Shown here piece after piece: positions 8,298-63,700 of a stretch of DNA of 64,000 nucleotides (the first letter of the stretch is position 1; the number at the start of each line of letters is the position of its first letter). Under the pieces are notes generated by a model. That model was given only the letters and a program-made list of their open reading frames with translations. It was not told the origin of the DNA and did not search any database. The translations under genes were made by a program, and so were the position numbers. This DNA comes from Octopus sinensis (lineage: Eukaryota), in NCBI RefSeq assembly GCF_006345805.1, contig NC_043026.1, positions 3,658,001 through 3,722,000 of the forward strand, in the 5' to 3' direction.

Positions 8298-42124
<33,827 letters not shown>

Positions 42125-42199: not shown

Positions 42200-42302
42200 A
42201 TGTAAAACTTGAAACTTTTTTTGTCATGTTATCTTTTACTTGTCTCTGAATTTATCACCTATACATACATATACATCATCACCGTCATCATCATCATCAT
42301 AA

Positions 42303-45284
42303 CCCTTTTGTTACCATACCTCTGTTGAGATGCTCTGTGTTTCTTTCAATTAATTGTAAATATAACAACGAATTTAGTAAAATAACTTAGTTATCATTAA
42401 GCTAGTGTTAGGAACATAAATTGTGACTAAGGTTTGGTGGAAGATTTTAATTCAGAACTTAAGAAAACAAGACATTTGTACTACAGAGCCAGATGTGGTT
42501 TCAGCCAGGTTGGTAACGAAAGGGTTAAGAATTGCTTCTCTATTATATATTTTAACCCTCTTGTTACCGTATTTATTTTGAGATGCTCTGTGTTTCTTCC
42601 AATTACTTTAAATATAACAAAGAATTTAGTAAAATAACTTTGTTATCATTAAGCTAGTGTTAGGAATATAAATTGTGACTAAGGAATGGTGGAAGATTAT
42701 AATTCAAAACTTATGAAAACAAGACATTTGTACTACAGAGCCAGATGTGGTTTCAGCCAGGTTGGTAACGAAAGGGTTAAGAATTGCTTCTCTATTATAT
42801 TTTACCCTCTTGTTACCATACCTCTGTTGAGATGCTCTGAGTTTCTTTCAATATTTCTAAATATAACAAAGAATTTAGTAAAATAACTTAGTTATCATTT
42901 AGCTGGTGTTAGGAACATAAATTGTGACTAAGGTTTGGTGGAAGATTTTAATTCAAAACTTATGAAAACAAGACAATGTAGTCAGAGCCAGAGCCGGTTT
43001 CAACCAGGTTGGTAACAAAAGGGTTAAGAATTGTTTCTCTATTATATATTTTAACCCTTTTGTTACCATACCTCTGTTGAGATGCTCTGTGTTTCTTTCA
43101 ATTACTTTAAATATAACAACGAATTTAGTTAAATAACTCAGTTATCATTCAGCTAGTGTTAGGAACATAAATTGTGACTAAGGTTTGGTGGAAGATTTTA
43201 ATTCAGAACTTAAGAAAACAAGACATTTGTACTACAGAGCCAGATGTGGTTTCAGCCAGGTTGGTAACGAAAGGGTTAAGAATGCTTCTCTATTATATTT
43301 TAACCCTCTTGTTACCATACCTCTGTTGAGATGCTCTGTGTTTCTTCCAATTACTTTAATATAACAAAGAATTTAGTAAAATAACTTTGTTATCATTAAG
43401 CTAGTGTTAGGAATATAAATTGTGACTAAGGAATGGTGGAAGATTTATAATTCAAAATTATGAAAACAAGACATTTGTACTACAGAGCCAGATGTGGTTT
43501 CAGCCAGGTTGGTAACGAAAGGGTTAAGAATTGCTTCTCTATTATATTTTAACCCTCTTGTTACCATACCTCTGTTGAGATGCTCTGAGTTTCTTTCAAT
43601 ATTTCTAAATATAACAAAGAATTTAGTAAAATAACTTAGTTATCATTTAGCTGGTGTTAGGAACATAAATTGTGACTAAGGTTTGGTGGAAGATTTTAAT
43701 TCAAAACTTATGAAAACAAGACAATTGTAGTCAGAGCCAGAGCCGGTTTCAACCAGGTTGGTAACAAAAGGGTTAAGAATTGTTTCTCTATTATATATTT
43801 TAACCCTTTTGTTACCATACCTCTGTTGAGATGCTCTGTGTTTCTTTCAATTACTTTAAATATAACAACGAATTTAGTTAAATAACTCAGTTATCATTCA
43901 GCTAGTGTTAGGAACATAAATTGTGACTAAGGTTTGGTGGAAGATTTTAATTCAGAACTTAAGAAAACAAGACATTTGTACTACAGAGCCAGATGTGGTT
44001 TCAGCCAGGTTGGTAACGAAAGGGTTAAGAATTGCTTCTCTATTATATTTTAACCCTCTTGTTACCATACCTCTGTTGAGATGCTCTGTGTTTCTTCCAA
44101 TTACTTTAAATATAACAAAGAATTTAGTAAAATAACTTTGTTATCATTAAGCTAGTGTTAGGAATATAAATTGTGACTAAGGAATGGTGGAAGATTTATA
44201 ATTCAAAACTTATGAAAGCAAGACATTTGTACTACAGAGCCAGAGATGGTTTCAACCAGGCTGGTATCAAAAGGGTTAAGAATTGTTTCTCTATTATATA
44301 TTTTAACCCTCTTGTTACTATATTTCTGTTGAGATGCTCTGTATTTCTTTCAATTAATTTTAAATATAACAAAGAATTTAGTAAAATAATATCGTTATCA
44401 TTGAGCTAGTGTTAGGAACATAAATTGTGACTAAGGTTTGGTGGAAGATTTTAATTCAGAACTTAAGAAAACAAGACATTTGTACTACAGAGCCAGATGT
44501 GGTTTCAGCCAGGTTGGTAACGAAAGGGTTAAGAATTGCTTCTCTATTATATATTTTAACCCTCTTGTTACCGTATTTATTTTGAGATGCTCTGTGTTTC
44601 TTCCAATTACTTTAAATATAACAAAGAATTTAGTAAAATAACTTTGTTATCATTAAGCTAGTGTTAGGAATATAAATTGTGACTAAGGAATGGTGGAAGA
44701 TTTATAATTCAAAACTTATGAAAACAAGACATTTGTACTACAGAGCCAGATGTGGTTTCAGCCAGGTTGGTAACGAAAGGGTTAAGAATTGCTTCTCTAT
44801 TATATATTTTAACCCTTTTGTTACCGTATTTATTTTGAGATGCTCTGTGTTTCTTCCAATTACTTTAAATATAACAAAGAATTTAGTAAAATAACTTTGT
44901 TATCATTAAGCTAGTGTTAGGAATATAAATTGTGACTAAGGAATGGTGGAAGATTTATAATTCAAAACTTATGAAAACAAGACATTTGTACTACAGAGCC
45001 AGATGTGGTTTCAGCCAGGTTGGTAACGAAAGGGTTAAGAATTGCTTCTCTATTATATTTTAACCCTCTTGTTACCATACCTCTGTTGAGATGCTCTGAG
45101 TTTCTTTCAATATTTCTAAATATAACAAAGAATTTAGTAAAATAACTTAGTTATCATTCAGCTGGTGTTAGGAACATAAATTGTGACTAAGGTTTGGTGG
45201 AAGATTTTAATTCAGAACTTACGAAAACAAGACATTTGTACAACAGAATCAGAGGTGGTTTCAGCCAGGTTGGTAACAAAAGGG
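42303..45284. mobile_element. Array of 12 head-to-tail piggyBac-type MITE copies (~250-bp period), inverted relative to 28864-29412
   Basis: Each unit ccctYttgttacc...ggtaacRaaaggg; spacer ttaa-gaattgYttctctattatatatt-ttaa. Confidence 0.9.
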
Positions 45285-45330
45285 TTATCTTGCAGTGTGC
45301 AAGATAACTGAGTGACTCAAGGTCTGAGAG

Positions 45331-45606: not shown

Positions 45607-45874
45607 TTCCCATTCAAACTTGTTATACTCTTACGACTTCAATACCAAAGTATGGCTGATATTGTCGACGATAAACAATACACTGTAACAGTGTTATAAC
45701 GATACAAAATAGAAACAGCAGCAGTAACAAACACATGGAGGCACAATGGCTCAGTGGTTAGGGCAGCGGACTTGCAGTTGGAGAATCGTGGTTTCAATTC
45801 TCAGACCGGGCGTTGTGTGTGTTTATTGAGCGATGGTGGTGTGTTTACATCCCCATAACTTAATGGTTCAGCAA

Positions 45875-47010
45875 AAGACACTGACAGAATAAGTAATAGG
45901 CTTACAAGGAATAAGTCCTGGGGTCGATTTGCTCGACTAAAAGGCGGTGCTCCAGCATGGCCACAGTCAAAAAACTGAAACAAGTAAAAGAGGCCGATAG
46001 AATAAGTACTAGGCTTACAAAGAATAAGTCCTGGGTTCGATTTCCTTGACTAAAAGGCGGTGCTCCAGCATGGCCGCAGTCAAATGACTGAAACAAGTAA
46101 AAGAGGCCGATAGAATAAGTACTAGGCTAACAAAGAATAAGTCCTGGGGTCGATTTGCTCGACTAAAGGTGGTGCTCCAGCATGGCCACAGTTAAATGAC
46201 TGAAACAAGTAAAAGAGACCGATAGAATAAGTACTAGGCTTACAAAGAATAAGTCCTGGGGTTGATTTTCTTGACTAAAAGGCGGTGCTCCAGCATGGCC
46301 GCAATCAAATGACTGAAACAAGTAAAAGAGACCGATAGAATAAGTACTAGGCTTACAAAGAATAAGTCCTGGGGTCGATTTGCTCGACTAAAGGTGGTGC
46401 TCCAGCATGGCCACAGTTAAATGACTGAAACAAGTAAAAGAGACCGATAGAATAAGTACTAGGCTTACAAAGAATAAGTCCTGGGGTCGATTTGCTTGAC
46501 TAAAAGGCGGTGCTCCAGCATGGCCGCAGTCAAATGACTGAAACAAGTAAAAGAGGCCGATAGAATAAGTACTAGGCTTACAAAGAATAAGTCCTGGGGT
46601 CGATTTGCTCGACTAAAGGTGGTGCTCCAGCATGGCCACAGTTAAATGACTGAAACAAGTAAAAGAGACCGATAGAATAAGTACTAGGCTTACAAAGAAT
46701 AAGTCCTGGGGTTGATTTTCTTGACTAAAAGGCGGTGCTCCAGCATGGCCGCAATCAAATGACTGAAACAAGTAAAAGAGACCGATAGAATAAGTACTAG
46801 GCTTACAAAGAATAAGTCCTGGGGTCGATTTGCTCGACTAAAGGTGGTGCTCCAGCATGGCCACAGTTAAATGACTGAAACAAGTAAAAGAGACCGATAG
46901 AATAAGTACTAGGCTTACAAAGAATAAGTCCTGGGGTCGATTTGCTTGACTAAAAGGCGGTGCTCCAGCATGGCCACAGTCAAATGACTGAAACAAGTAA
47001 AAGAGTGAAA
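45875..47010 (+). repeat. ~10 tandem copies of the ~112-bp SINE family A 3' unit, largely alternating variants
   Basis: gatagaataagtactaggc about every 112-113 bp; ggcggtg/ggtggtg variants mostly alternate. Confidence 0.9.
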
Positions 47011-50324: not shown

Positions 50325-51060
50325 ATTGCCCACAAGGGGCTAAACATAGAAGGAACAAACAAGGACAGACAAATGGATTAAGTCGATTACATCGACCCCA
50401 GTGCGTAACTGGTACTTAATTTATCGACCCTGAAAGGATGAAAGGCAAAGTCGACCTCGGCGGAATTTGAACTCAGAACTTAACGGCAGTCGAAATACCT
50501 ATTTTTTTATTGCCCACAAGGGGCTAAACACAGAGAGGACACACGGATTAAGTCGATTACATCGACCCCAGTGCGTAACTGGTACTTAATTTATCGACCC
50601 GAAAGGATGAAAGACAAAGTCGGCCTCGGCGAAATTTGAACTCAGAATGTAGCGGCAGATGAAATACCTATTTCTTTACTACCCATAAGGGGCTAAACGC
50701 AGAGAGGACAAACGGATTAAGTCGATTACATCAACCCCAGTGCGTAACTGGCACTTAATTTATTGACCCTGAAAGGATGAAAGACAATGTCGCCCTCGGC
50801 AGAATTTGAACTCAGAATGTAGCAGCAGACGAAATACTTATTTCTTTACTACTCACAAGGGGCTAAACACAGAGGGACAAACAAGGACAGACAAACGGAT
50901 TAAGTCGATTACATCGACCCCAGTGCGTAATTGGTACTTAATTTATCGACCCTGAAAGGATGAAAGGCAAAGTCAACCTCGGCAGAATTTGAACTCAGAA
51001 CGTAATGGCAGACGAAATACTGCTAAGCACTTCACCCGGCGTGCTAACGTTTCTGCCAGC
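50325..51060 (-). repeat. SINE family B with 4 tandem copies of the ~180-bp 3' unit
   Basis: Same unit and junction as 34055-34630. Confidence 0.85.
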
Positions 51061-51122: not shown

Positions 51123-52039
51123 TGGAGGCACAATGGCCCAGTGGTTAGGGCAGCGGACTCGCGGTTTTGATTCCCAGACCGGGCGTTGTGAGTGTTTATT
51201 GAGCGAAAACACCTAAAAAGCTCCACGAGGCTCCGGCAGGGGATGGTGGCGATCCCTGCTGTACTCTTTCACCACAACTTTCTCTCACTCTTACTTCCTG
51301 TTTCTGTTGTACCTGTATTTCAAAGGGCCGGCCTTGTCACTCTCTGTGTCATGCTGAATATCCCCGAGAACTACGTTAAGGGTACACGTGTCTGTGGAGT
51401 GCTCAGCCACTTACACGTTAATTTCACGAGCAGGCTGTTCCGTTGATTCGGATCAACCGGAACCCTCGTCGTCGTAACCAACTGAGTGCTTCCATCCGAG
51501 GCTCTGGCAGGGGATGGTGGTGATCCCTGCTGTACTCTTTCACCACAACTTTCTCTCACTCTTACTTCCTGTTTCTGTTGTACCTGTATTTCAAAGGGCC
51601 GGCCTTGTCACTCTCTGTGTCATGCTGAATATCCCCGAGAACTACGTTAAGGGTACACGTGTCTGTGGAGTGCTCAGCCACTTACACGTTAATTTCACGA
51701 GCAGGCTGTTCCGTTGATTCGGATCAACCGGAACCCTCGTCGTCGTAACCAACTGAGTGCTTCCATCCGAGGCTCTGGCAGGGGATGGTGGTGATCCCTG
51801 CTGTACTCTTTCACCACAACTTTCTCTCACTCTTACTTCCTGTTTCTGTTGTACCTGTATTTCAAAGGGCCGGCCTTGTCACTCTCTGTGTCACGCTAAA
51901 TATCGCCGAGAACGACGTTAAGGGTACACGTGTCTATGGAGTACTCAGCCACTTACACGTTAATTTCACGAGCAGGCTGTTCCGTTGATTCGGATCAACC
52001 GGAACCCTCGTCGTCGTAACCAACGGAATGCTTCCATCC
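51123..52039 (+). mobile_element. SINE family C with a triplicated 271-bp 3' part, inside a 13-bp TSD
   Basis: atacagtcaaatg at 51110-51122 and 52040-52052; ORF-track repeats at 51514 and 51785 are 271 apart. Confidence 0.85.
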
Positions 52040-52321
52040 ATACAGTCAAATGCCTTGGCTGAATATATGAAGCAAGCCAATGAATCTTCGTAACTGCAGT
52101 TGCCTCCGTACCAGAATGCTGATCGCCTTAAATGCCTCGTTTATTGTCTTAAATACTGGTAAAAAATTTTTTTTACTTGTTCTAGCTTCTGTTCATCTCA
52201 CTTCGTACTTACCTTTTTTGTAGTCTTATTAACACAATGGCCACCTTCAGTGATTTATCGCAAACATCTCATAACCATCATATGCACCACCAGTGGTACT
52301 TTTTCATAATTTGAGAAAGTA

Positions 52322-55300
52322 TTGGGTTGTCTGGAAAGTTTGTGCCGATTTATAGTAGCTTACCTTTCGACTTCTTTTAGAACACGGTTGAGTTCATAAC
52401 ATAGGATTTAACTACACCTCCATTCAGAGCACAGTTTAAGCTAGCTCTGCTTTTCTCTCAAGATATTGGGTTGTCTGGAAAGTTTGTGCCGATTTATAGT
52501 AGCTTACCTTTCGACTTATTTTAGAACATGGTTGAGTCCATAAAATAGGATTTGACTACACCTCCATTCAGAGCACAGTTTAAGCTAGCTCTGCTTTTCT
52601 CTCAAGATATTGGGTTGTCTGGAAAGTTCGCGCCGATTTATAGTAGCTTACCTTTCGACTTATTTTAGAACACGGTTGAGTTCATAACATAGGATTTAAC
52701 TACACCTCCATTTAGAGCCCAGTTTAAGCTAGCTCTGCTTTTCTCTCAAGATATTGGGTTGTCTGGAAAGTTCGCGCCGATTTATAGTAGCTTACCTTTC
52801 GACTTCTTTTAGAACACGGTTGAGTTCATAACATAGGATTTAACTACACCTCCATTTAGAGCACAGTTTAAGCTAGCTCTGCTTTTCTCTCAAGATATTG
52901 GGTTGTCTGGAAAGTTCGCGCCGATTTATAGTAGCTTACCTTTCGACTTATTTTAACACGGTTGAGTTCATAACATAGGATTTAACTACACCTCCATTTA
53001 GAGCCCAGTTTAAGCTAACTCTGCTTTTCTCTCAAGATATTGGGTTGTCTGGAAAGTTTGTGCCGATTTATAGTAGCTTACCTTTCGACTTATTTTAGAA
53101 CACGGTTGAGTTCATAACATAGGATTTAACTACACCTCCATTTAGAGCCAGTTTAAGCTAGCTCTGCTTTTCTCTCAAGATATTGGGTTGTCTGGAAAGT
53201 TCGCGCCGATTTATAGTAGCTTACCTTTCGACTTATTTTAGAACACGGTTGAGTTCATAAAATAGGATTTAACTACACCTCCATTTAGAGCCCAGTTTAA
53301 GCTAGCTCTGCTTTTCTCTCAAGATATTGGTTGTCTGGAAAGTTTGTGCCGATTTATAGTAGCTTACCTTTCGACTTATTTTAGAACACGGTTGAGTTCA
53401 TAAAATAGGATTTAACTACACCTCCATTTAGAGCCCAGTTTAAGCTAGCTCTGCTTTTCTCTCAAGATATTGGGTTGTCTGGAAAGTTTGTGCCGATTTA
53501 TAGTAGCTTACCTTTCGACTTATTTTAGAACACGGTTGAGTTCATAAAATAGGATTTAACTACACCTCCATTTAGAGCCCAGTTTAAGCTAGCTCTGCTT
53601 TTCTCTCAAGATATTGGGTTGTCTGGAAAGTTCGTGCCGATTTATAGTAGCTTACCTTTCGACTTATTTTAGAACATAGTTGAGTCCATAAAATAGGATT
53701 TGACTACACCTCCATTTAGAGCACAGTTTAAGCTAGCTCTGCTTTTCTCTCAAGATATTGGGTTGTCTGGAAAGTTTGTGCCGATTTATAGTAGCTTACC
53801 TTTCGACTTATTTTAGAACATGGTTGAGTCCATAAAATAGGATTTGACTACACCTCCATTTGGAATCCAGTTTAAGCTAGCTCTGCTTTTCTCTCAAGAT
53901 ATTGGGTTGTCTGGAAAGTTCTTGCCGATTTATAGTAGCTTACCTTTCGACTTATTTTAGAACATGGTTGAGTCCATAAAATAGGATTTGACTACACCTC
54001 CATTTGGAGTCCAGTTTAAGCTAGCTCTGCTTTTCTCTTAAGATATTGGGTTGTCTGGAAAGTTTGTGCCGATTTATAGTAGCTTACCTTTCGACTTATT
54101 TTAGAACATGGTTGAGTCGATAAAATAGGATTTGACTACACCTCCATTTGGAGTCCAGTTTAAGCTAGCTCTGCTTTTCTCTCAAGATATTGGGTTGTCT
54201 GGAAAGTTCGTGCCGATTTATAGTAGCTTACCTTTCAACTTATTTTAGAACATGGTTGAGTCCATAAAATAGGATTTGACTACATCTCCATTTAGAGCAC
54301 AGTTTAAGCTAGCTCTGCTTTTCTCTTAAGATATTGGGTTGTTTGGAAGGTTTTTGCCGATTTATAGTAGCTTACCTTTCGACTTATTTTAGAACATGGT
54401 TGAGTCCATAAAATAGGATTTGACTACACCTCCATTTGGAGTCCAGTTTAAGCTAGCTCTGCTTTTCTCTCAAGATATTGGGTTGTCTGGAAAGTTCGTG
54501 CCGATTTATAGTAGCTTACCTTTCAACTTATTTTAGAACATGGTTGAGTCCATAAAATAGGATTTGACTACATCTCCATTTAGAGCACAGTTTAAGCTAG
54601 CTCAGCTTTTCTCTTAAGATATTGGGTTGTTTGGAAGGTTTGGGCCGATTTATAGTAGCTTACCTTTCGACTTATTTTAGAACATGTTTGAGTCCATAAA
54701 ATAGGATTTGACTACACCTCCATTTAGAGTCCAGTTTAAGCTAGCTCTGCTTTTCTCTTAAGATATTGGGTTGTCTGGAAAGTTCGTGCCGATTTATAGT
54801 AGCTTACCTTTCGACTTATTTTAGAACATGGTTGAGTCCATAAAATAGGATTTGACTACATCTCCATTTAGAGCACAGTTTAAGCTAGCTCTGCTTTTCT
54901 TTCAAGATATTGGGTTGTCTGGAAAGTTCATGCCGATTTATAGTAGCTTACCTTTCGACTTATTTTAGAACACAGTTGAGTCCATAAAATAGGATTTGAC
55001 TACACCTCCATTTAGAGCACAGTTTAAGCTAGCTCAGCTTTTCTCTCAAGATATTGGGTTGTCCGGAAAGTTCATGCCAATTTATAGTAGCTTACCTTTC
55101 GACTTATTTTAGAACATGGTTGAGTCCATAAAATAGGATTTGACTACACCTCCATTTAGAGCACAGTTTAAGCTAGCTCTGCTTTTCTCTAAAGATATTG
55201 GGTTGTCTGGAAAGTTCTTGCCGATATATAGTAGCTTACCTTTCGACTTATTTTAGAACATGTTTGAGTCCATAAAATAGGATTTGACTACACTTCCATT

Positions 55301-58300
55301 TAGAGCCCAGTTTAAGCTAGCTCTGCTTTTCTCTCAAGATATTGGGTTGTCTGGAAAGTTCTTGCCGATATATAGTAGCTTACCTTTCGACTTATTTTAG
55401 AACATGGTTGAGTTCATAAAATAGGATTTGACTACACCTCCATTTAGAGCCCAGTTTAAGCTAGCTCTGCTTTCCTCTCAAGATATTGGGTTGTCTGGAA
55501 AGTTTGTGCCGATTTATAGTAGCTTACCTTTCGACTTATTTTAGAACATGGTTGAGTCCATAAAATAGGATTTGACTACACCTCCATTTAGAGCCCAGTT
55601 TAAGCTAGCTCTGCTTTTCTCTCAAGATATTGGGTTGTCTGGAAAGTTCGTGCCGATTTATAGTAGCTTACCTTTCGACTTATTTTAGAACATGGTTGAG
55701 TCCATAAAATAGGATTTGACTACACCTCCATTTAGAGCACAGTTTAAGCTAGCTCAGCTTTTCTCTCAAGATATTGGGTTGTCTGGAAAGTTTGTGCCGA
55801 TTTATAGTAGCTTACCTTTCGACTTATTTTAGAAAATGGTTGAGTACATAAAATAGGATTTGACTACACCTCCATTTAGAGCACAGTTTAAGCTAGCTCA
55901 GCTTTTCTCTCAAGATATTGGGTTGTCTGGAAAGTTTGTGCCGATTTATAGTAGCTTACCTTTCGACTTATTTTAGAACATGGTTGAGTCCATAAAATAG
56001 GATTTGACTACACCTCCATTTAGAGCACAGTTTAAGCTAGCTCAGCTTTTCTCTCAAGATATTGGGTTGTCTGGAAAGTTTGTGCCGATTTATAGTAGCT
56101 TACCTTTCGACTTATTTTAGAACATGGTTGAGTCCATAAAATAGGATTTGACTACACCTCCATTTAGAGCACAGTTTAAGCTAGCTCTGCTTTTCTCTCA
56201 AGATACTGGGTTGTCTGGAAAGTTTGTGCCGATTTATAGTAGCTTACCTTTCGACTTATTTTAGAACATGGTTGAGTCCATGAAATAGGATTTGACTACA
56301 CCTCCATTTAGAGCACAGTTTAAGCTAGCTCTGCTTTTCTCTCAAGATACTGGGTTGTCTGGAAAGTTTGTGCCGATTTATAGTAGCTTACCTTTCGACT
56401 TATTTTAGAACATGGTTGAGTCCATAAAATAGGATTTGACTACACCTCCATTTAGAGCACAGTTTAAGCTAGCTCAGCTTTTCTCTCAAGATATTGGGTT
56501 GTCTGGAAAGTTTGTGCCGATTTATAGTAGCTTACCTTTCGACTTATTTTAGAACATGGTTGAGTCCATAAAATAGGATTTGACTACACCTCCATTTAGA
56601 GCCCAGTTTAAGCTAGCTCTGCTTTTCTCTCAAGATATTGGGTTGTCTGGAAAGTTCTTGCCGATTTATAGTAGCTTACCTTTCGACTTATTTTAGAACA
56701 TGGTTGAGTCCATAAAATAGGATTTGACTACACCTCCATTTAGAGCACAGTTTAAGCTAGCTCTGCTTTTCTCTCAAGATATTGGGTTGTCTGGAAAGTT
56801 CATGCCGATTTATAGTAGCTTACCTTTCGACTTATTTTAGAACATGGTTGAGCCCATAAAATAGGATTTGACTACACCTCCATTTATAGCACAGTTTAAG
56901 CAAGCTCTGCTTTTCTCTCAAGATATTGGGTTGTCTGGAAAGTTTGTGCCGATTTATAGTAGCTTACCTTTCGACTTATTTTAGAACATGGTTGAGTCCA
57001 TAAAATAGGATTTGACTACACCTCCATTTAGAGCACAGTTTAAGCAAGCTCTGCTTTTCTCTCAAGATATTGGGTTGTCTGGAAAGTTTGTGCCGATTTA
57101 TAGTAGCTTACCTTTCGACTTATTTTAGAACATGGTTGAGTCCATAAAATAGGATTTGACTACACCTCCATTTGGAGTCCAGTTTAAGCTAGCTCTGCTT
57201 TTCTCTCAAGATATTGGGTTGTCTGGAAAGTTCGTGCCGATTTATAGTAGCTTACCTTTCGACTTATTTTAGAACATGGTTGAGTCCATAAAATAGGATT
57301 TGACTACATCTCCATTTAGAGCACAGTTTAAGCTAGCTCTGCTTTTCTCTTAAGATATTGGGTTGTTTGGAAAGTTTGTGCCGATTTATAGTAGCTTACC
57401 TTTCGACTTATTTTAGAACATGGTTGAGTCCATAAAATAGGATTTGACTACACCTCCATTTGGAGTCCAGTTTAAGCTAGCTCTGCTTTTCTCTCAAGAT
57501 ATTGGGTTGTCTGGAAAGTTCGTGCCGATTTATAGTAGCTTACCTTTCAACTTATTTTAGAACATGGTTGAGTCCATAAAATAGGATTTGACTACATCTC
57601 CATTTAGAGCACAGTTTAAGCTAGCTCTGCTTTTCTCTCAAGATATTGGGTTGTCTGGAAAGTTCATGCCGATTTATAGTAGCTTACCTTTCGACTTATT
57701 TTAGAACAGAGTTGAGTCCATAAAATAGGATTTGACTACACCTCCATTTAGAGCACAGTTTAAGCTAGCTCAGCTTTTCTCTCAAGATATTGGGTTGTCC
57801 GGAAAGTTCATGCCGATTTATAGTAGCTTACCTTTCGACTTATTTTAGAACATGGTTGAGTCCATAAAATAGGATTTGACTATACCTCCATTTAGAGCAC
57901 AGTTTAAGCTAGCTCTGCTTTTCTCTCAAGATATTGGGTTGTCCGGAAAGTCCTTGCCGATTTATAGTAGCTTACCTTTCGACTTATTTTAGACACAGAG
58001 TTGAGTCCATAAAATAGGATTTGACTACCCCATTTAGAGCACAGTTTAAGCTAGCTCAGCTTTTCTCTCAAGATATTGGGTTGTCCGGAAAGTTCATGCC
58101 GATTTATAGTAGCTTACCTTTCGACTTATTTTAGAACATGGTTGAGTCCATAAAATAGGATTTGACTACACCTCCATTTAGAGCACAGTTTAAGCTAGCT
58201 CTGCTTTTCTCTCAAGATATTGGGTTGTCTGGAAAGTTCGTGCCGATTTATAGTAGCTTACTTTCGACTTATTTTAGAACATGGTTGAGTCCATAAAATA

Positions 58301-61300
58301 GGATTTGACTACACCTCCATTTAGAGCACAGTTTAAGCTAGCTCTGCTTTTCTCTCAAGATATTGGGTTGTCTGGAAAGTTCGTGCCGATTTATAGTAGC
58401 TTACCTTTCGACTTATTTTAGAACATGGTTGAGTCCATAAAATAGGATTTGACTACACCTCCATTTAGAGCACAGTTTAAGCTAGCTCTGTTTTTCTCTC
58501 AAGATATTTGGTTGTCCGGAAAGTTTGTGCCGATTTATAGTAGCTTACCTTTCGACTTATTTTAGAACATGGTTGAGTCCATAAAATAGGATTTGACTAC
58601 AACTCCATTTAGAGCACAGTTTAAGCTAGCTCTGCTTTTCTCTCAAGATATTGGGTTGTCTGGAAAGTTTGTGCCGATTTTTAGTAGCTTACCTTTCGAC
58701 TTATTTTAGAACATGGTTGAGTCCATAAAATAGGATTTGACTATACCTCCATTTAGAGCACAGTTTAAGCTAGCTCTGCTTTTCTCTCAAGATATTGGGT
58801 TGTCTGGAAAGTTCTTGCCGATTTATAGTAGCTTACCTTTCGACTTATTTTAGAACATGGTTGAGTCCATAAAATAGGATTTGACTATACCTCCATTTAG
58901 AGCACAGTTTAAGCTAGCTCTGCTTTTCTCTCAAGATATTGGGTTGTCTGGAAAGTTCTTGCCGATTTATAGTAGCTTACCTTTCGACTTATTTTAGAAC
59001 ATGGTTGAGTCCATAAAATAGGATTTGACTATACCTCCATTTAGAGCACAGTTTAAGCTAGCTCTGCTTTTCTCTCAAGATATTGGGTTGTCCGGAAAGT
59101 TTGTGCCGATTTATAGTAGCTTACCTTTCGACTTATTTTAGAACATGGTTGAGTCCATAAAATAGGATTTGATACACCTCCATTTAGAGCACAGTTTAAG
59201 CTAGCTCTGCTTTTCTCTCAAGATATTGGGTTGTCCGGAAAGTCCTTGCCGATTTATAGTAGCTTACCTTTCGAATTATTTTAGAACATGGTTGAGTCCA
59301 TAAAATAGGATTTGATACACCTCCATTTAGAGCACAGTTTAAGCTAGCTCTGCTTTTCTCTCAAGATATTGGATTGTCTGGAAAGTTTGTGCCGATTTAT
59401 AGTAGCTTACCTTTCGACTTATTTTAGAACATGGTTGAGTCCATAAAATAGGATTTTACTACACCTCCATTTAGAGCACAGTTTAAGCTAGCTCTGCTTT
59501 TCTCTCAAGATATTGGGTTGTTTGGAAAGTTCTTGCCGATTTATAGTAGCTTACCTTTCGACTTATTTTGGAACATGGTTGAGTCCATAAAATAGGATTT
59601 CACTACACCTCCATTTAGAGCCCAGTTTAAGCTAGCTCTGCTTTTCTCTCAAGATATTGGGTTGTCTGGAAAGTTCTTGCCGATTTATAGTAGCTTACCT
59701 TTCGACTTATTTTGGAACATGGTTGAGTCCATAAAATAGGATTTCACTACCCTCCATTTAGAGCCCAGTTTAAGCTAGCTCTGCTTTTCTCTCAAGATTT
59801 GGGTTGTCTGGAAAGTTCTTGCCGATTATAGTAGCTTACCTTTCGACTTATTTTAGAACATGGTTGAGTCCATAAAGTAGGATTTGACTACACCTCCATT
59901 TAGAGCACAGTTTAATCTAGCTCTGTTTTTCTCTCAAGATATTTGGTTGTCCGGAAAGTTTGTGCCGATTTATAGTAGCTTACCTTTCGACTTATTTTAG
60001 AACATGGTTGAGTCCATAAAATAGGATTTGACTACAACTCCATTTAGAGCACAGTTTAAGCTAGCTCTGCTTTTCTCTCAAGATATTGGGTCGTCTGGAA
60101 AGTTTGTGCCAATTTTTAGTAGCTTACCTTTTGACTTATTTTAGAACATGGTTGAGTCCATAAAATAGGATGTTACTACAACTCCATTTAGAGCACAGTT
60201 TAAGCTAGCTCTGCTTTTCTCTCAAGATATTGGGTTGTCTGGAAAGTTTGTGCCGATTTTTAGTAGCTTACCTTTCGACTTATTTTAGAACATGGTTGAG
60301 TCCATAAAATAGGATTTGACTATACCTCCATTTAGAGCACAGTTTAAGCTAGCTCTGCTTTTCTCTCAAGATATTGGGTTGTCCGGAAAGTCCTTGCCGA
60401 TTTATAGTAGCTTACCTTTCGACTTATTTTAGAACATGGTTGAGTCCATAAAATAGGATTGACTATACCTCCATTTAGAGCACAGTTTAAGCTAGCTCTG
60501 CTTTTCTCTCAAGATATTGGGTTGTCCGGAAAGTCCTTGCCGATTTATAGTAGCTTACTTTCGACTTATTTTAGAACATGGTTGAGTCCATAAAATAGGA
60601 TTTGATACACCTCCATTTAGAGCACAGTTTAAGCTAGCTCTGCTTTTCTCTCAAGATATTGGATTGTCTGGAAAGTTTGTGCCGATTTATAGTAGCTTAC
60701 CTTTCGACTTATTTTAGAACATGGTTGAGTCCATAAAATAGGATTTTACTACACCTCCATTAGAGCACAGTTTAAGATAGCTCTGCTTTTCTCTCAAGAT
60801 ATTGGGTTGTTGGAAAGTTCTTGCCGATTTATAGTAGCTTACCTTTCGACTTATTTTGGAACATGGTTGAGTCCATAAAATAGGATTTCACTACACCTCC
60901 ATTTAGAGCCCAGTTTAAGCTAGCTCTGCTTTTCTCTCAAGATATTGGGTTGTCTGGAAAGTTCTTGCCGATTTATAGTAGCTTACCTTTCGACTTATTT
61001 TAGAACATGGTTGAGTCCATAAAGTAGGATTTGACTACACCTCCATTTAGAGCACAGTTTAATCTAGCTCTGTTTTTCTCTCAAGATATTTGGTTGTCCG
61101 GAACGTTTGTGCCGATTTATAGTAGCTTACCTTTCGACTTATTTTAGAACATGGTTGAGTCCATAAAATAGGATTTGACTACAACTCCATTTAGAGCACA
61201 GTTTAAGCTAGCTCTGCTTTTCTCTCAAGATATTGGGTTGTCTGGAAAGTTCTTGCCGATTTTTAGTAGCTTACCTTTCGACTTATTTTAGAACATGGTT

Positions 61301-62504
61301 GAGTCCATAAAATAGGATTTGACTATACCTCCATTTAGAGCACAGTTTAAGCTAGCTCTGCTTTTGTCTCAAGATATTGGGTTGTCCGGAAAGTCCTTGC
61401 CGATTTATAGTAGCTTACCTTTCGACTTATTTTAGAACATGGTTGAGTCCATAAAAATAGATTTGACTATACCTCCATTTAGAGCACAGTTTAAGCTAGC
61501 TCTGCTTTTGTCTCAAGATATGGGTTGTCCGGAAAGTCCTTGCCGATTTATAGTAGCTTACCTTTCGACTTATTTTAGAACATGGTTGAGTCCATAAAAT
61601 AGGATTTGACTATACCTCCATTTAGAGCACAGTTTAAGCTAGCTCTGCTTTTCTCTCAAGATATTGGGTTGTCCGGAAAGTCCTTGCCGATTTATAGTAG
61701 CTTACCTTTCGACTTATTTTAGAACATGGTTGAGTCCATAAAATAGGATTTGATACACCTCCATTTAGAGCACAGTTTAAGCTAGCTCTGCTTTTCTCTC
61801 AAGATATTGGGTTGTCCGGAAAGTTTGTGCCGATTTATAGTAGCTTACCTTTCGACTTATTTTAGAACATGGTTGAGTCCATAAAATAGGATTTGATACA
61901 CCTCCATTTAGAGCACAGTTTAAGCTAGCTCTGCTTTTCTCTCAAGATATTGGATTGTCTGGAAAGTTTGTGCCGATTTATAGTAGCTTACCTTTCGACT
62001 TATTTTAGAACATGGTTGAGTCCATAAAATAGGATTTGACTACACCTCCATTTGGAGTCCAGTTTAAGCTAGCTCTGCTTTTCTCTCAAGATATTGGGTT
62101 GTTTGGAAAGTTCTTGCCGATTTATAGTAGCTTACCTTTCGACTTATTTTAGAACATGGTTGAGTCCATAAAATAGGATTTCACTACACCTCCATTTGGA
62201 GTCCAAGTTTAAGCTAGCTCTGCTTTTCTCTCAGATATTGGTTGTTTGGAAAGTTCTTGTGCCGATTTACAGTAGCTTACCTTTCGACTTATTTTAGAAC
62301 ATGGTTGAGTCCATAAAATAGGATTTCACTACACCTCCATTTAGAGCCCAGTTTAAGCTAGCTCTGCTTTTCTCTCAAGATATTGGGTTGTTTGGAAAGT
62401 TCTTGCCGATTTATAGTAGCTTACCTTTCGACTTATTTTAGAACATGGTTGAGTCAATAAAATAGGATTTGACTACACCTCCATTTAGAGCACAGTTTAA
62501 GCTA
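52322..62504 (+). repeat. 144-bp satellite, ~71 copies, each beginning with a mariner left TIR
   Basis: attgggttgt at 52321, 52465, 52609...; the unit start is the reverse complement of the right TIR at 62927-62956. Confidence 0.95.
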
Positions 62505-62956
62505 TCTTTTTGTGGAAGAAGGTTTATGTTCCTATAACCTGTGTTAATTCTGTAACCCTTTAAAATGGAAAATAAGAAAGTTCATTTTCAGCACTTGATG
62601 CTTTGGGAACCAGACAAAAATTGCTGCAGCTTGGCTGGGATGTGTTACCCCACCGTCCATATTCACCAGATATTGCTCCTTCAGATTTCTACTTATTCAG
62701 ATCTCTGCAGAATTGTCTTAATGGTAAAAATTTCAATTCCTTGGATAACATAAAAAGATACCTTGATGAATTCTTTGCCATGAAACCACCTCAATTCTCG
62801 GAAGAGGATATTTTCAAGTTAAAGGAAAGATGGAGACGCATTGTGCAACAAAATGAACAAAATGGTTCATATTTGGTTGATTAAAAATGTAATGACAAGT
62901 ATTTATTGACCTTTTGTTTCCTTTAAAAATCAGCACAAACTTTCTGGACAACCCAA
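62383..62956 (+). mobile_element. Internally deleted mariner element (last satellite unit + 5' UTR + fused transposase N- and C-termini + right TIR)
   Basis: MENKKVHFQHLMLWE from 62565 is joined out of frame to LGWDVLPHRPYSPDIAPSDFYLFRSL...GSYLVD* (ends 62884); TIR aaatcagcacaaactttctggacaacccaa|TA. Confidence 0.9.
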
Positions 62957-62966
62957 TATATATATA

Positions 62967-63191
62967 TTGGGTTGTCCGGAAAGTTTGTGCCGATCTATAG
63001 TAGCTTACCTTTCGACTTACCCTCCCAGGCACCTCAATTCTGGGAAGATGGTATTTCCAAGCTAAAGGAAAGATGGAGACGCATTGTGCAACAAAATGGT
63101 TCATATTTGGTTAATTAAAAATGTAATGGCAAATATCTATTGACCTTTTTCTTTCCTTTAAAAATCGGCATGAACCTGCCGGAAAACCCAA
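62967..63191 (+). mobile_element. 225-bp mariner MITE of the same family, adjacent via (TA)5
   Basis: TA|ttgggttgtccggaaagt...ccggaaaacccaa|TA with a remnant of the transposase 3' end. Confidence 0.88.
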
Positions 63192-63328
63192 TATTTTATT
63201 CTGTATCTCTGATATGGTTTCGAGAATGTTTGAATAACACGAGGACTAAACATTGATATTTAATAATGAAATACTGTAAAAATACTGGAAGAAATATTTG
63301 AATTGCATCAGACGTGAGACCAATTTTT

Positions 63329-63700
63329 GGAAGCACTCCGTCGGTTACGACGACAAGGGTTCCGGTTGATCCGATCAACGGAACAGCCTGCTCGTGAAAT
63401 TAACGTGTGAGTGGCTGAGCACTCCACAGACACGTGTACCCTTAACGTAGTTCTCGGGGATATTCAGCGTGACAAGGCCGGCCCTTTGAAATACAGGTAC
63501 AACAGAAACAGGAAGAAAGAGTGAGAGAAAGTTGTGGTGAAAGAGTACAGCAGGGATCACCACCATCCACTGCCGGAGCCTCGTGGAGCTTTTTAGGTGT
63601 TTTCGCTCAATAAACACTCACAACGCCCGGTCTGCGAATCGAAACCGCGATCCTATGACTGCGAGTCCGCTGCCCTAACCACTGGGCCATTGCGCCTCCA
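63329..63700 (-). mobile_element. SINE family C, full length
   Basis: Reverse complement of the 18141 and 51123 copies; tgagaccaat at 63315-63324 and 63707-63716 is a likely TSD. Confidence 0.85.

What the first reader, a model, noticed from the sequence alone, without database searches (positions are those of the whole stretch)
52320..63193. 10-kb satellite built from ~71 copies of a mariner left end, still inside its parent element
Seen: each 144-bp unit is TA + 30-bp TIR + subterminal sequence + a 20-nt linker (gctctgcttttctctcaaga). The last unit leaves the repeat after ...gtttaagcta and continues into the element's 5' UTR, transposase start, an internal deletion, the YSPDIAPSD C-terminus and the right TIR. 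The linker is absent from that continuation, so it is foreign to the element. Known: mariner transposases bind TIRs and insert at TA. Inference: this is a satellite caught at birth from a transposon end. It offers about 70 transposase-binding sites against one right end, so it could act as a transposase sink or a set of alternative excision ends. The near-nucleosome unit length may be coincidence.
Basis: partly seen in the sequence, partly recalled or inferred. Interest (0 to 1): 0.8.

Follow-up and report, generated by a model that had tools for sequence, protein, structure and literature searches.

The report
Tandem array of mariner left ends
A 10-kb stretch made of 71 head-to-tail copies of the left end of a broken mariner transposon is still joined to that transposon; it is a clean but ordinary example of repeat DNA growing out of a transposon, with no sign of a function.

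Summary
TRF finds a 144-bp array at 52320-62504 with 70.9 copies and 96% matches. Each unit is TA, a ~30-bp TIR, subterminal sequence to position 124, and the 20-nt linker. There are 71 left ends and 70 linkers. The last left end runs on into a 5' UTR, 14 transposase codons, an internal deletion, a 91-aa mariner C-terminus and the right TIR, which ends at 62958.

The array is not newborn: monomers differ by about 5%, CpG sites have decayed, and neighbours and multi-monomer blocks show repeated unequal exchange. The TIR is the most variable part of the unit, so nothing points to upkeep as a transposase-binding platform.

The linker matches neither flank nor the element's continuation, but the parent lacks about 700 bp, so "foreign" is unproven.

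One third of the window is TE-derived arrays. One of them, a piggyBac-like MITE plus a constant linker, has the same architecture and sits at two loci.

Best reading: a neutral, transposon-derived array that grew by unequal exchange from a precursor with two left ends and a spacer. It is a new variant of a known kind, of moderate interest.

The parts
52320..52321 (+). TA at the left boundary: the target-site dinucleotide of the whole composite and the first two bases of unit 1
   Evidence: unique flank ...TTTGAGAAAG | TA | TTGGGTTG
52320..62504 (+). 144-bp tandem array with 71 mariner left ends (TA + ~30-bp TIR + subterminal sequence to position 124) separated by 70 copies of a 20-nt linker
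52444..52463 (+). First copy of the 20-nt linker GCTCTGCTTTTCTCTCAAGA. The last copy is at 62361-62380. Each copy is flanked by TA on both sides
   Evidence: 70 copies, none outside the array; no significant match to the flanks or to the rest of the window
62381..62504 (+). Last left end (monomer 71, 124 bp, no linker), which is the true left end of the parent element
   Evidence: 3 differences from the array consensus
62505..62564 (+). Rest of the 5' UTR of the parent element
   Evidence: no similarity to the linker (p 0.44-0.94)
62565..62606 (+). Transposase start, 14 codons reading MENKKVHFQHLMLW
   Evidence: A sister element reads EENKVHFRHLMLFFYRKG at the same place
62601..62604 (+). Internal deletion junction. 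CTTT microhomology is inferred because the sister element has CTTT on both sides of the deleted stretch. About 700 bp are lost, including the DNA-binding domain and the first two catalytic aspartates
   Evidence: alignment to L010; inference
62609..62884 (+). C-terminal 91 codons of a mariner transposase plus stop, containing the YSPDIAPSD motif with the third catalytic D
   Evidence: 7103 relatives at E<=1e-3; best 67-70% identity, named SETMAR-like or Ammar1 transposase, many carrying PF01359
62927..62958 (-). Right TIR plus TA of the parent element
   Evidence: over the 32-nt TA+TIR the reverse complement differs from the array's consensus left end at 4 positions (5 across the first 35 aligned bases)
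62959..62964 (.). TATATA spacer between the two elements. With the two TSDs it forms a (TA)5 run
62965..63193 (+). Second, independent mariner deletion derivative (MITE-like). It has 56 bp of left end (TA included), about 10 nt of filler (CCCTCCCAGG) and about 165 bp of right end, is TA-flanked, and lies head-to-tail with the parent
   Evidence: 89% identity to the parent over the shared right part

Best explanation
This is a neutral, transposon-derived tandem array (a young satellite or large minisatellite). It grew from the 5' end of a non-autonomous mariner element.

The precursor held two left ends in direct orientation, separated by a 20-nt spacer: L124 - spacer - L124 - rest of element.

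My preferred route to that precursor has two steps. First, two insertions of the same family land in the same orientation at TA sites 20 bp apart. Second, the upstream copy loses everything from position 125 to its right end, with TA microhomology at the join.

Unequal sister-chromatid exchange or replication slippage between the two 124-bp repeats then amplified the unit [L124 + spacer]. Later events duplicated single units and blocks of about 9 and about 21 units. The array has since decayed, mainly at CpG sites.

Shown: the anatomy, the N ends with N-1 spacers, the spatial structure and the decay. Inferred: the double insertion, the deletion and the neutrality.

The array carries no working gene, and nothing indicates a selected function.
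For: 1. There are 71 left ends but 70 linkers. The array begins with a left end next to unique DNA and ends with a left end that runs into the element. A simple in-situ duplication of one contiguous segment would leave a linker at one boundary. Neither the upstream flank nor the continuation resembles the linker (p 0.34-0.94). The ancestor therefore already had two left ends around one spacer.
2. Close same-orientation insertions of this family happen at this very site. The parent and a second derivative sit head-to-tail, 6 bp apart, in a (TA)5 run. Double insertion followed by unequal exchange is the documented route for hobo and R1 arrays (PMC5932611).
3. The linker is bounded by TA on both sides, as expected for host DNA between two TA targets.
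4. Growth by unequal exchange fits the monomer pattern. Adjacent monomers differ by 5.9 positions against 7.5+-0.2 when the order is permuted (0 of 5000 permutations reach the observed value). Block matches are m13-16 to m34-37 and m49-51 to m58-60, whereas permuted orders give at most runs of 3.
5. Neutral decay. Pi is highest in the TIR (0.083) and lower in the subterminal part (0.043) and the linker (0.038). The main variants sit at CpG sites. No TIR equals the ancestral form.
6. The genome does this routinely. 34.6% of the window is arrays of period >=60. One is a piggyBac-like MITE plus constant-linker array that also starts and ends with the TE.
Against: No full-length copy of the same family and no empty site could be obtained, so the spacer's host origin is untested.

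The model needs an extra deletion that ends exactly at the upstream element's right end.

The linker shares an 11-mer with the antisense strand of a conserved coding motif of a sister mariner (p about 0.012 before correction for the several hypotheses tried). This favours a repair-filler origin.

The MITE+linker unit occurs at two loci in this window. Such arrays can therefore arrive ready-made, so this one need not have been born here.
Confidence: 0.5

Rival explanations
1. The array formed elsewhere and arrived by transposition. A transposase paired one left TIR of an already duplicated structure with the single right TIR and moved the whole piece into this TA. Copy number then changed locally. 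The array-bearing element would be a member of a dispersed family.
For: The composite 52320-62958 is bounded exactly by TA + left TIR and right TIR + TA. This explains without any extra deletion why no linker precedes the first unit. In the same window a piggyBac-like MITE plus 23-nt linker unit occurs at two loci in opposite orientation with the same linker. Its larger array begins and ends exactly at MITE termini.
Against: No second copy of the 144-bp unit or the linker exists in the 64-kb window. A 10.6-kb mariner would be a poor substrate if it moved at its present size (general knowledge of length dependence in mariner transposition, not tested here). TA on both sides is uninformative, because every mariner insertion has it.
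Confidence: 0.2
2. The spacer is repair filler, not host DNA. After an excision or a one-ended cut, abortive gap repair with template switching produced a rearranged left end: L124, 20 nt copied from the element's interior in reverse orientation, then a second left end. That structure was then amplified.
For: The linker shares the 11-mer TTTTCTCTCAA with the antisense strand of the conserved ...IERKRSW coding stretch of a sister mariner. Only 1.2% of random 20-mers from the window do as well. The similarity continues across the junction: TATT then TTGT. Members of this family do carry junction filler and microhomology: about 10 nt of filler in the second derivative and CTTT at the parent's deletion.
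Against: The p-value is uncorrected for about five other origins I tested. At protein level the match is not significant: shuffles reach the observed 7-mer score 57% of the time. The sister family is only 67% identical in coding DNA, so an exact 11-mer is not strongly expected. The inverted orientation needs a more complex event.
Confidence: 0.15
3. One reading: the array acts as a transposase sink, or as a set of about 70 alternative left ends that modulate the activity of the family.
For: Each unit has TA plus a TIR within 1-3 changes of the ancestral form in 63 of 71 units. Titration of transposase by defective copies is an established idea for mariner (Hartl et al. 1997, cited in PMC9659126). 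McGurk and Barbash note that intact TIRs in tandems are cut sites (PMC5932611).
Against: The TIR is the least conserved part of the unit. No intact transposase is in the window, and the family looks old (89% identity between the two local copies). Seventy sites would be small against the copy numbers that a sister family reaches: 206 TIRs in 120 contigs. Persistence of 71 intact-looking ends argues that no transposase has been cutting here.
Confidence: 0.07
4. Amplification in one step by rolling-circle replication of a 144-bp circle (eccDNA), followed by reintegration through homology with the left end.
For: This was proposed for the Bari1 arrays (PMC9659126; PMC5932611). A circle junction would create a constant novel joint.
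Against: A circle must come from a contiguous 144-bp segment, so the linker would have to adjoin the left end in the source. It adjoins it on neither side here. The positional structure and block duplications indicate many successive events, although they could have followed an initial burst.
Confidence: 0.05
5. Assembly artefact: a short array of a few units expanded by the assembler.
For: Tandem arrays are error-prone in assemblies, and no reads are available here.
Against: Most of the 71 monomers are distinct. Five pairs among the full-length monomers are identical in the alignment. Subfamilies lie in contiguous zones, and there are ordered multi-monomer blocks and few indels. That is the pattern of a real, evolved array.
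Confidence: 0.03

Closest known systems
Tetris / TIR-220 of Drosophila virilis (PMC4079207)
   Same: A DNA-transposon terminus supplies the monomer. Arrays are found inside the element and grow to kb size.
   Different: In Tetris the ~220-bp repeats are internal to long foldback TIRs and occur in both arms. Here the unit contains the very tip of the element (TA + complete TIR) plus a non-element spacer, and only the left end is amplified.
Xstir arrays from the Xmix MITE, and miDNA4 (a Tc1/mariner MITE with an internal satellite), in Xenopus (reviewed in PMC12628747 and PMC9659126)
   Same: A Tc1/mariner-type or MITE element is linked to a tandem array, and composite 'MITE + array' forms exist.
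   Different: In those cases the repeats are internal sequences between intact ends, or derive from whole MITEs. None is described as tandem copies of one complete end attached to a single opposite end.
hobo, P, R1 and Bari1 tandem arrays of Drosophila (PMC5932611)
   Same: The route is TE dimer to array by unequal exchange, with an identical junction in every unit. Bari1 belongs to the Tc1-mariner superfamily. The hobo array lies in euchromatin about 19.5 kb from a gene.
   Different: Their units are whole elements, with both termini or symmetric terminal deletions at the junction. The fixed arrays there (Bari1, the D. guanche P-related array) have incomplete TIRs. Here the unit is 124 bp of one end with a complete TIR.
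Truncated Helitron arrays with many 5' ends and a single 3' end (Xiong et al., as described in PMC12628747)
   Same: Same gross picture: many copies of one terminus, one copy of the other.
   Different: Helitrons replicate by rolling circle, which explains their arrays. Mariner is a cut-and-paste DDD element with no such step.
The piggyBac-like MITE + linker array in this same window (42300-45287 and 28860-29408)
   Same: A TIR element plus a constant short linker. The larger array begins and ends with the TE, giving N elements and N-1 linkers.
   Different: The unit is a complete MITE with both TIRs, and the same unit is seen at two loci.

Membership tests
mariner family (Tc1/mariner superfamily) | TA target-site duplication at both ends | tested here: met
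   TA at 52320-21 and 62957-58. The second element has TA at 62965-66 and 63192-93.
mariner family (Tc1/mariner superfamily) | Terminal inverted repeats of about 28-32 bp | tested here: met
   Over the 32-nt TA+TIR, the consensus left end and the reverse complement of the right end differ at 4 positions (5 across the first 35 aligned bases). The same TIR is found in >=120 metagenome contigs, on 1.25-1.3-kb elements and on MITEs.
mariner family (Tc1/mariner superfamily) | Transposase with a DD34D catalytic domain | tested here: inconclusive
   Only 14 N-terminal and 91 C-terminal codons remain. The C-terminal piece has the YSPDxAPSD motif (third D) and 7103 homologues, many annotated mariner/SETMAR/PF01359. 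Pfam gives no hit for the fragment alone. The first two D residues are deleted.
satellite DNA | Long head-to-tail array of one monomer with high similarity between monomers | tested here: met
   70.9 copies, 96% matches, 10.2 kb.
satellite DNA | Local homogenisation or higher-order blocks from unequal exchange | tested here: met
   Lag-1 difference is 5.9 against 7.5+-0.2 when permuted. Block matches occur at lags 9 and 21.
satellite DNA | Genome-wide abundance, multiple arrays, heterochromatic location | not testable with these tools
   Only one locus in 64 kb. The source genome is not in the searchable collections.
TE-dimer-seeded array (double insertion, McGurk & Barbash) | The tandem junction holds both TE termini with the target site between them | tested here: not met
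   The unit junction has position 124 of the left end, the linker, then TA + left TIR, and no right terminus. The criterion is met only by the unexpanded pair of parent and second derivative.
TE-dimer-seeded array (double insertion, McGurk & Barbash) | One identical junction in all units, showing descent from a single dimer | tested here: met
   70 linkers: 47 identical, 21 with one change, one with two and one with three.
Foldback / Tetris-type TIR repeats | Tandem repeats present inside both terminal inverted repeats | tested here: not met
   The right end carries a single TIR and no repeats.
Helitron-type multi-5'-end arrays | Rolling-circle (Rep/Hel) element | tested here: not met
   The termini and the coding remnant are mariner.

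The most novel reading that the evidence does not exclude
The 10.6-kb composite is, or was, a mobilisable satellite carrier. Any of the 71 left ends can pair with the single right end. Excision from an inner left end would leave behind a parent-less array, that is a free satellite. It would also carry a shorter array to a new TA site. That would give a transposase-driven route for releasing satellite arrays from their parent element and seeding them across a genome. The presence of a MITE+linker array family at two loci in this window would be the same process with another transposon.
Probability: 0.12. Interest if true: 0.7.

Novelty: new variant of a known kind. Interest (0 to 1): 0.38.

Why it matters
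How dispersed transposons turn into tandem satellites is still argued case by case: double insertion, rolling circle, repair errors, or expansion of internal repeats. This locus keeps the array, its parent element, both boundaries and a neighbouring same-orientation insertion in one readable piece.

The count of N ends with N-1 spacers constrains the founding event. If the source genome is searched, three simple look-ups would decide between the models. They are the linker in the full-length consensus, other loci with the same junction, and the empty site.

The locus also shows that an array of complete, TA-flanked TIRs can persist. McGurk and Barbash argued that intact TIRs, being transposase cut sites, should hasten the loss of tandems; the fixed arrays they cite (Bari1, the D. 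guanche P-related array) have incomplete TIRs. It does not by itself change what is known about satellites or mariners.

Tried and rejected
1. Linker as a diverged copy of the upstream flank, of the element's continuation or of the downstream flanks. Global alignments are no better than shuffles (p 0.34-0.96).
2. Linker copied from elsewhere in the window. Best local score is 21 against 20.1+-1.8 for shuffles.
3. Linker as a sense fragment of the transposase ORF (ALLFSQD compared with GVVFHQD). A 7-mer BLOSUM scan against 20 mariner transposases is matched by 57% of shuffles.
4. Similarity between the mariner linker and the MITE-array linker (TGCTT..CTCT) is not significant (p 0.095).
5. Fetching full-length copies of the same family:
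   - The protein search with the C-terminal piece gave nothing above 70% identity.
   - The representative search gave only distant mariners.
   - An exact subterminal 22-mer has 0 hits in JGI metagenomes.
   - The TIR pattern has 0 hits in 185,579 prokaryote genomes.
   - The TIR pattern hit >=120 metagenome contigs, but these share only the TIR and 67%-identical coding DNA. They are a sister family and cannot answer the linker question.
6. Tandem ends in that sister family: none in 120 loci. There is one pair of direct TIRs, 1659 bp apart, which is not an array.
7. Identifying the host. The 1741-aa ORF at 23735-28960 has no Pfam family (only two sub-threshold matches) and no homologue at E<=1e-10. 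From memory the SINEs look like those of octopus, but this is untested. The octopus repeat paper (PMC13282606) is therefore context only.
8. Pfam on the 91-aa fragment gave no hit. ARAGORN on 48-64 kb found no tRNA.
Full report
OBSERVATION. Tandem Repeats Finder reports one array at 52320..62504 with period 144, 70.9 copies, 96% matches, no indels and score 18281. I cut it into 71 monomers. Seventy are 142-145 bp long. The last is 124 bp and lacks the linker.

Each unit reads TA, then the TIR TTGGGTTGTCTGGAAAGTTCGTGCCGATTT, then subterminal sequence up to ...CACAGTTTAAGCTA at position 124, then GCTCTGCTTTTCTCTCAAGA. The TIR core is found 65 times in the array within 3 mismatches, against 0 expected by chance. 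The linker is found 70 times and nowhere else in the window.

The array begins directly at TA+TIR after the unique flank ...TTTGAGAAAG. After 62504 the sequence continues as follows:
- TCTTTTTGTGGAAG... (5' UTR).
- ATG at 62565, reading MENKKVHFQHLMLW.
- A frame change.
- TRQKLLQLGWDVLPHRPYSPDIAPSDFYLFRSLQNCLNGKNFNSL...SYLVD* at 62609-62884.
- A right TIR ending ...GGACAACCCAATA at 62958.

One thing was missed. After a (TA)5 run there is a second, separate deletion derivative of the same family at 62965-63193. It has 56 bp of left end (TA included), about 10 nt of filler, the last 32 codons and the right TIR.

WHAT THE ELEMENT IS. The 91-aa C-terminal piece has 7103 relatives at E<=1e-3 among 1.84 billion cluster representatives. 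The closest named ones, at 63-67% identity, are hymenopteran "SETMAR-like" proteins and Ammar1 transposases. Many hits carry PF01359. Pfam itself does not score the short fragment.

A scan of JGI metagenomes for the TIR found at least 120 contigs from samples Ga0157362-67. They carry 7 elements of 1.25-1.3 kb and 74 MITEs of 100-150 bp with the same TIR.

One full-length copy is L010:1255-2494. Its N-terminus reads EENKVHFRHLMLFFYRKG, and the C-terminal part of its ORF reads ...FHQDNARPHVSLITRQKLL.... This confirms that the window's element keeps about 14 N-terminal codons and resumes at TRQKLL. About 700 bp are lost, including the DNA-binding domain and two of the three catalytic aspartates. 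In the sister element both sides of the deleted stretch end in CTTT, so the deletion junction at 62601-62604 looks microhomology-mediated. That is an inference.

These contigs share only the TIR (about 90% identity) and 67%-identical coding DNA with the window. They are a sister family. They cannot tell us what the full-length 5' region of the window's own family looks like.

AGE AND MODE OF GROWTH.
- Monomers differ on average at 7.5 of 144 aligned positions, about 5%.
- Variation is highest in the TIR (pi 0.083). It is lower in the subterminal part (0.043) and the linker (0.038).
- The common variants sit at CpG sites: TCCGG/TCTGG, TTCGTG/TTTGTG/TTCATG and ACACGG/ACATGG.
- No monomer keeps the TIR inferred as ancestral from the second element, the right ends and the sister family. 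13 differ by one base, 38 by two and 20 by three to six.
- The two local family members are 89% identical. The first and last left ends of the array differ at 10 of 124 positions.
- The order of monomers is far from random. Neighbours differ by 5.9 positions against 7.5+-0.2 for permuted orders (0 of 5000 permutations). There are ordered block matches, m13-16 with m34-37 and m49-51 with m58-60, which permuted orders do not produce.
- A distinct subfamily occupies the left edge, m01 and m03-m09.

This is the signature of many rounds of unequal exchange or slippage over a long time. It is not a newborn array, not a single burst and not an assembler's copy-paste.

THE FOUNDING EVENT. The telling fact is the count: 71 left ends and 70 linkers. 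A tandem duplication of one contiguous ancestral segment leaves the novel joint inside and the ancestral sequence at both borders. A linker would then sit either before the first unit or after the last.

Neither the 20-26 nt upstream of the array nor the element's continuation resembles the linker (p 0.34-0.94). The downstream flanks do not either, and nothing else in the window does. The ancestor must already have been left end - spacer - left end. I see three ways to get there.

(a) Two same-orientation insertions at TA sites 20 bp apart, followed by loss of the upstream copy from position 125 to its right end. Supporting points:
- The linker is bounded by TA on both sides.
- Position 123-124 of the element is itself TA, giving microhomology with the target TA.
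- This very site shows two further family members inserted head-to-tail 6 bp apart in a (TA)5 run.
- Double insertion followed by unequal exchange is the documented origin of hobo and R1 arrays (PMC5932611).

(b) Repair filler. The linker shares TTTTCTCTCAA with the antisense strand of the conserved ...NNIERKRSW coding stretch of the sister mariner. Only 1.2% of random 20-mers from the window match that element so well. The second derivative carries about 10 nt of junction filler. However, the p-value is uncorrected for the other origins I tried. The protein-level test is negative.

(c) The array arose elsewhere and came in as a composite, bounded by a left TIR and the right TIR. This explains the clean left border without an extra deletion.

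In-window support for (c) is indirect but real. A 253-bp array at 42300-45287 consists of a complete piggyBac-like MITE (CCCT...AGGG, TTAA-flanked) plus a constant linker of about 23 nt. It begins and ends exactly with the MITE. The same MITE-linker-MITE junction recurs in inverted orientation at 29082-29118 and 29334-29370. TE+linker arrays therefore do get dispersed in this genome.

I rank (a) first, but the three cannot be separated without the rest of the genome.

FUNCTION. I find no evidence for one.
- The sink idea rests on established mariner biology (titration by defective copies; cited in PMC9659126).
- The TIRs here evolve faster than the rest of the unit.
- No intact transposase is nearby, and the family looks old.
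- Seventy sites are few beside the hundreds of MITE ends that a sister family reaches in less than 1 Mb.
- McGurk and Barbash point out that intact TIRs in tandems are cut sites that should destabilise arrays, and the fixed arrays they cite (Bari1, the D. guanche P-related array) have incomplete TIRs. The survival of 71 complete ends suggests that transposase has not been acting on this locus, rather than that the locus manages transposase.

CONTEXT. 22.1 kb of the 64-kb window (34.6%) lies in arrays with periods of 62-285 bp. Most are built from SINE or MITE pieces. The mariner array is the largest of them but not different in kind. It lies about 23 kb downstream of a 1741-codon open reading frame at 23735-28960. 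That ORF has no Pfam family and no detectable homologue. The region therefore looks genic rather than classically heterochromatic.

COMPARISON WITH WHAT IS KNOWN. Reviews list TIRs and UTRs of DNA transposons among the known sources of satellites (PMC12628747; PMC9659126). The nearest cases are:
- Tetris/TIR-220 (PMC4079207).
- Xstir/Xmix and the Tc1/mariner MITE miDNA4 in Xenopus.
- The Bari1, hobo and P arrays of Drosophila.
- Truncated Helitron arrays with many 5' ends and one 3' end.

None of those described in the papers I read has this unit: the complete tip of a mariner (TA + TIR + 92 bp) plus a short spacer, amplified on one side only, with the array still inside its parent. My searches for a description of such an array, or of this one, found none.

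I therefore file it as a new variant of a known kind. It is a neat specimen, not a new principle.

LIMITS. The source genome is not in the searchable collections. Copy number, genome-wide distribution, the family consensus and the empty site are all untested. The host identification (octopus-like SINEs) rests on my memory only.

Noticed in passing
window 62965-63193: A second mariner deletion derivative (229 bp with its TAs) lies head-to-tail with the parent element, separated only by a (TA)5 run. Its deletion junction carries about 10 nt of filler (CCCTCCCAGG). This shows repeated same-orientation insertion at this spot.
   Followed up: yes
window 42300-45287 and 28860-29408: 253-bp array (11.9 copies) whose unit is a complete piggyBac-like MITE (TTAA-flanked, CCCT...AGGG ends) plus a constant linker of about 23 nt. 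It starts and ends exactly with the MITE. The same MITE-linker-MITE junction recurs 13 kb away in inverted orientation (2.2 copies), just after the big ORF.
   Followed up: partly
window, whole: 34.6% of the window lies in tandem arrays of period >=60, mostly SINE-derived. Examples: 1-1606 (130 bp x12), 12437-13151 (62 x11.5), 36313-36768 (112 x4), 40784-41619 (142 x6), 45873-47005 (113 x10), 50368-51020 (170 x3.8), 51226-52039 (271 x3). There are also many (TA)n runs.
   Followed up: partly
window 51159-51989 and 63374-63650: Copies of one SINE-like repeat flank the mariner locus in inverted orientation, 94-98% complementary and 11.4-12.1 kb apart. The left one has its 3' part triplicated (271-bp period). 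ARAGORN finds no tRNA there. This may be coincidence in a SINE-rich genome.
   Followed up: partly
window 23735-28960 (+): Open reading frame of 1741 codons, rich in K/N/S. It has no Pfam family and no homologue at E<=1e-10 among proteins of 0.55-1.75 times its length. It is probably one giant exon of an unidentified gene.
   Followed up: partly
loci L001-L120 (JGI metagenome contigs Ga0157362-Ga0157367); e.g. L010:1255-2494: A sister mariner family has a TIR about 90% identical to the window's (the degenerate 28-nt TIR pattern matches exactly) but only 67%-identical coding DNA and unrelated subterminal sequence. In 853 kb there are 7 copies of 1.25-1.3 kb and 74 MITEs of 100-150 bp. The eukaryotic host of these contigs was not identified.
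   Followed up: partly
window linker copies (e.g. 52444-52463) compared with L010:1862-1872: The linker shares the exact 11-mer TTTTCTCTCAA with the antisense strand of the ...IERKRSW coding stretch of the sister mariner. The empirical chance for a random window 20-mer is 1.2%, uncorrected. It is unexplained and could mark the linker as inverted internal filler.
   Followed up: partly
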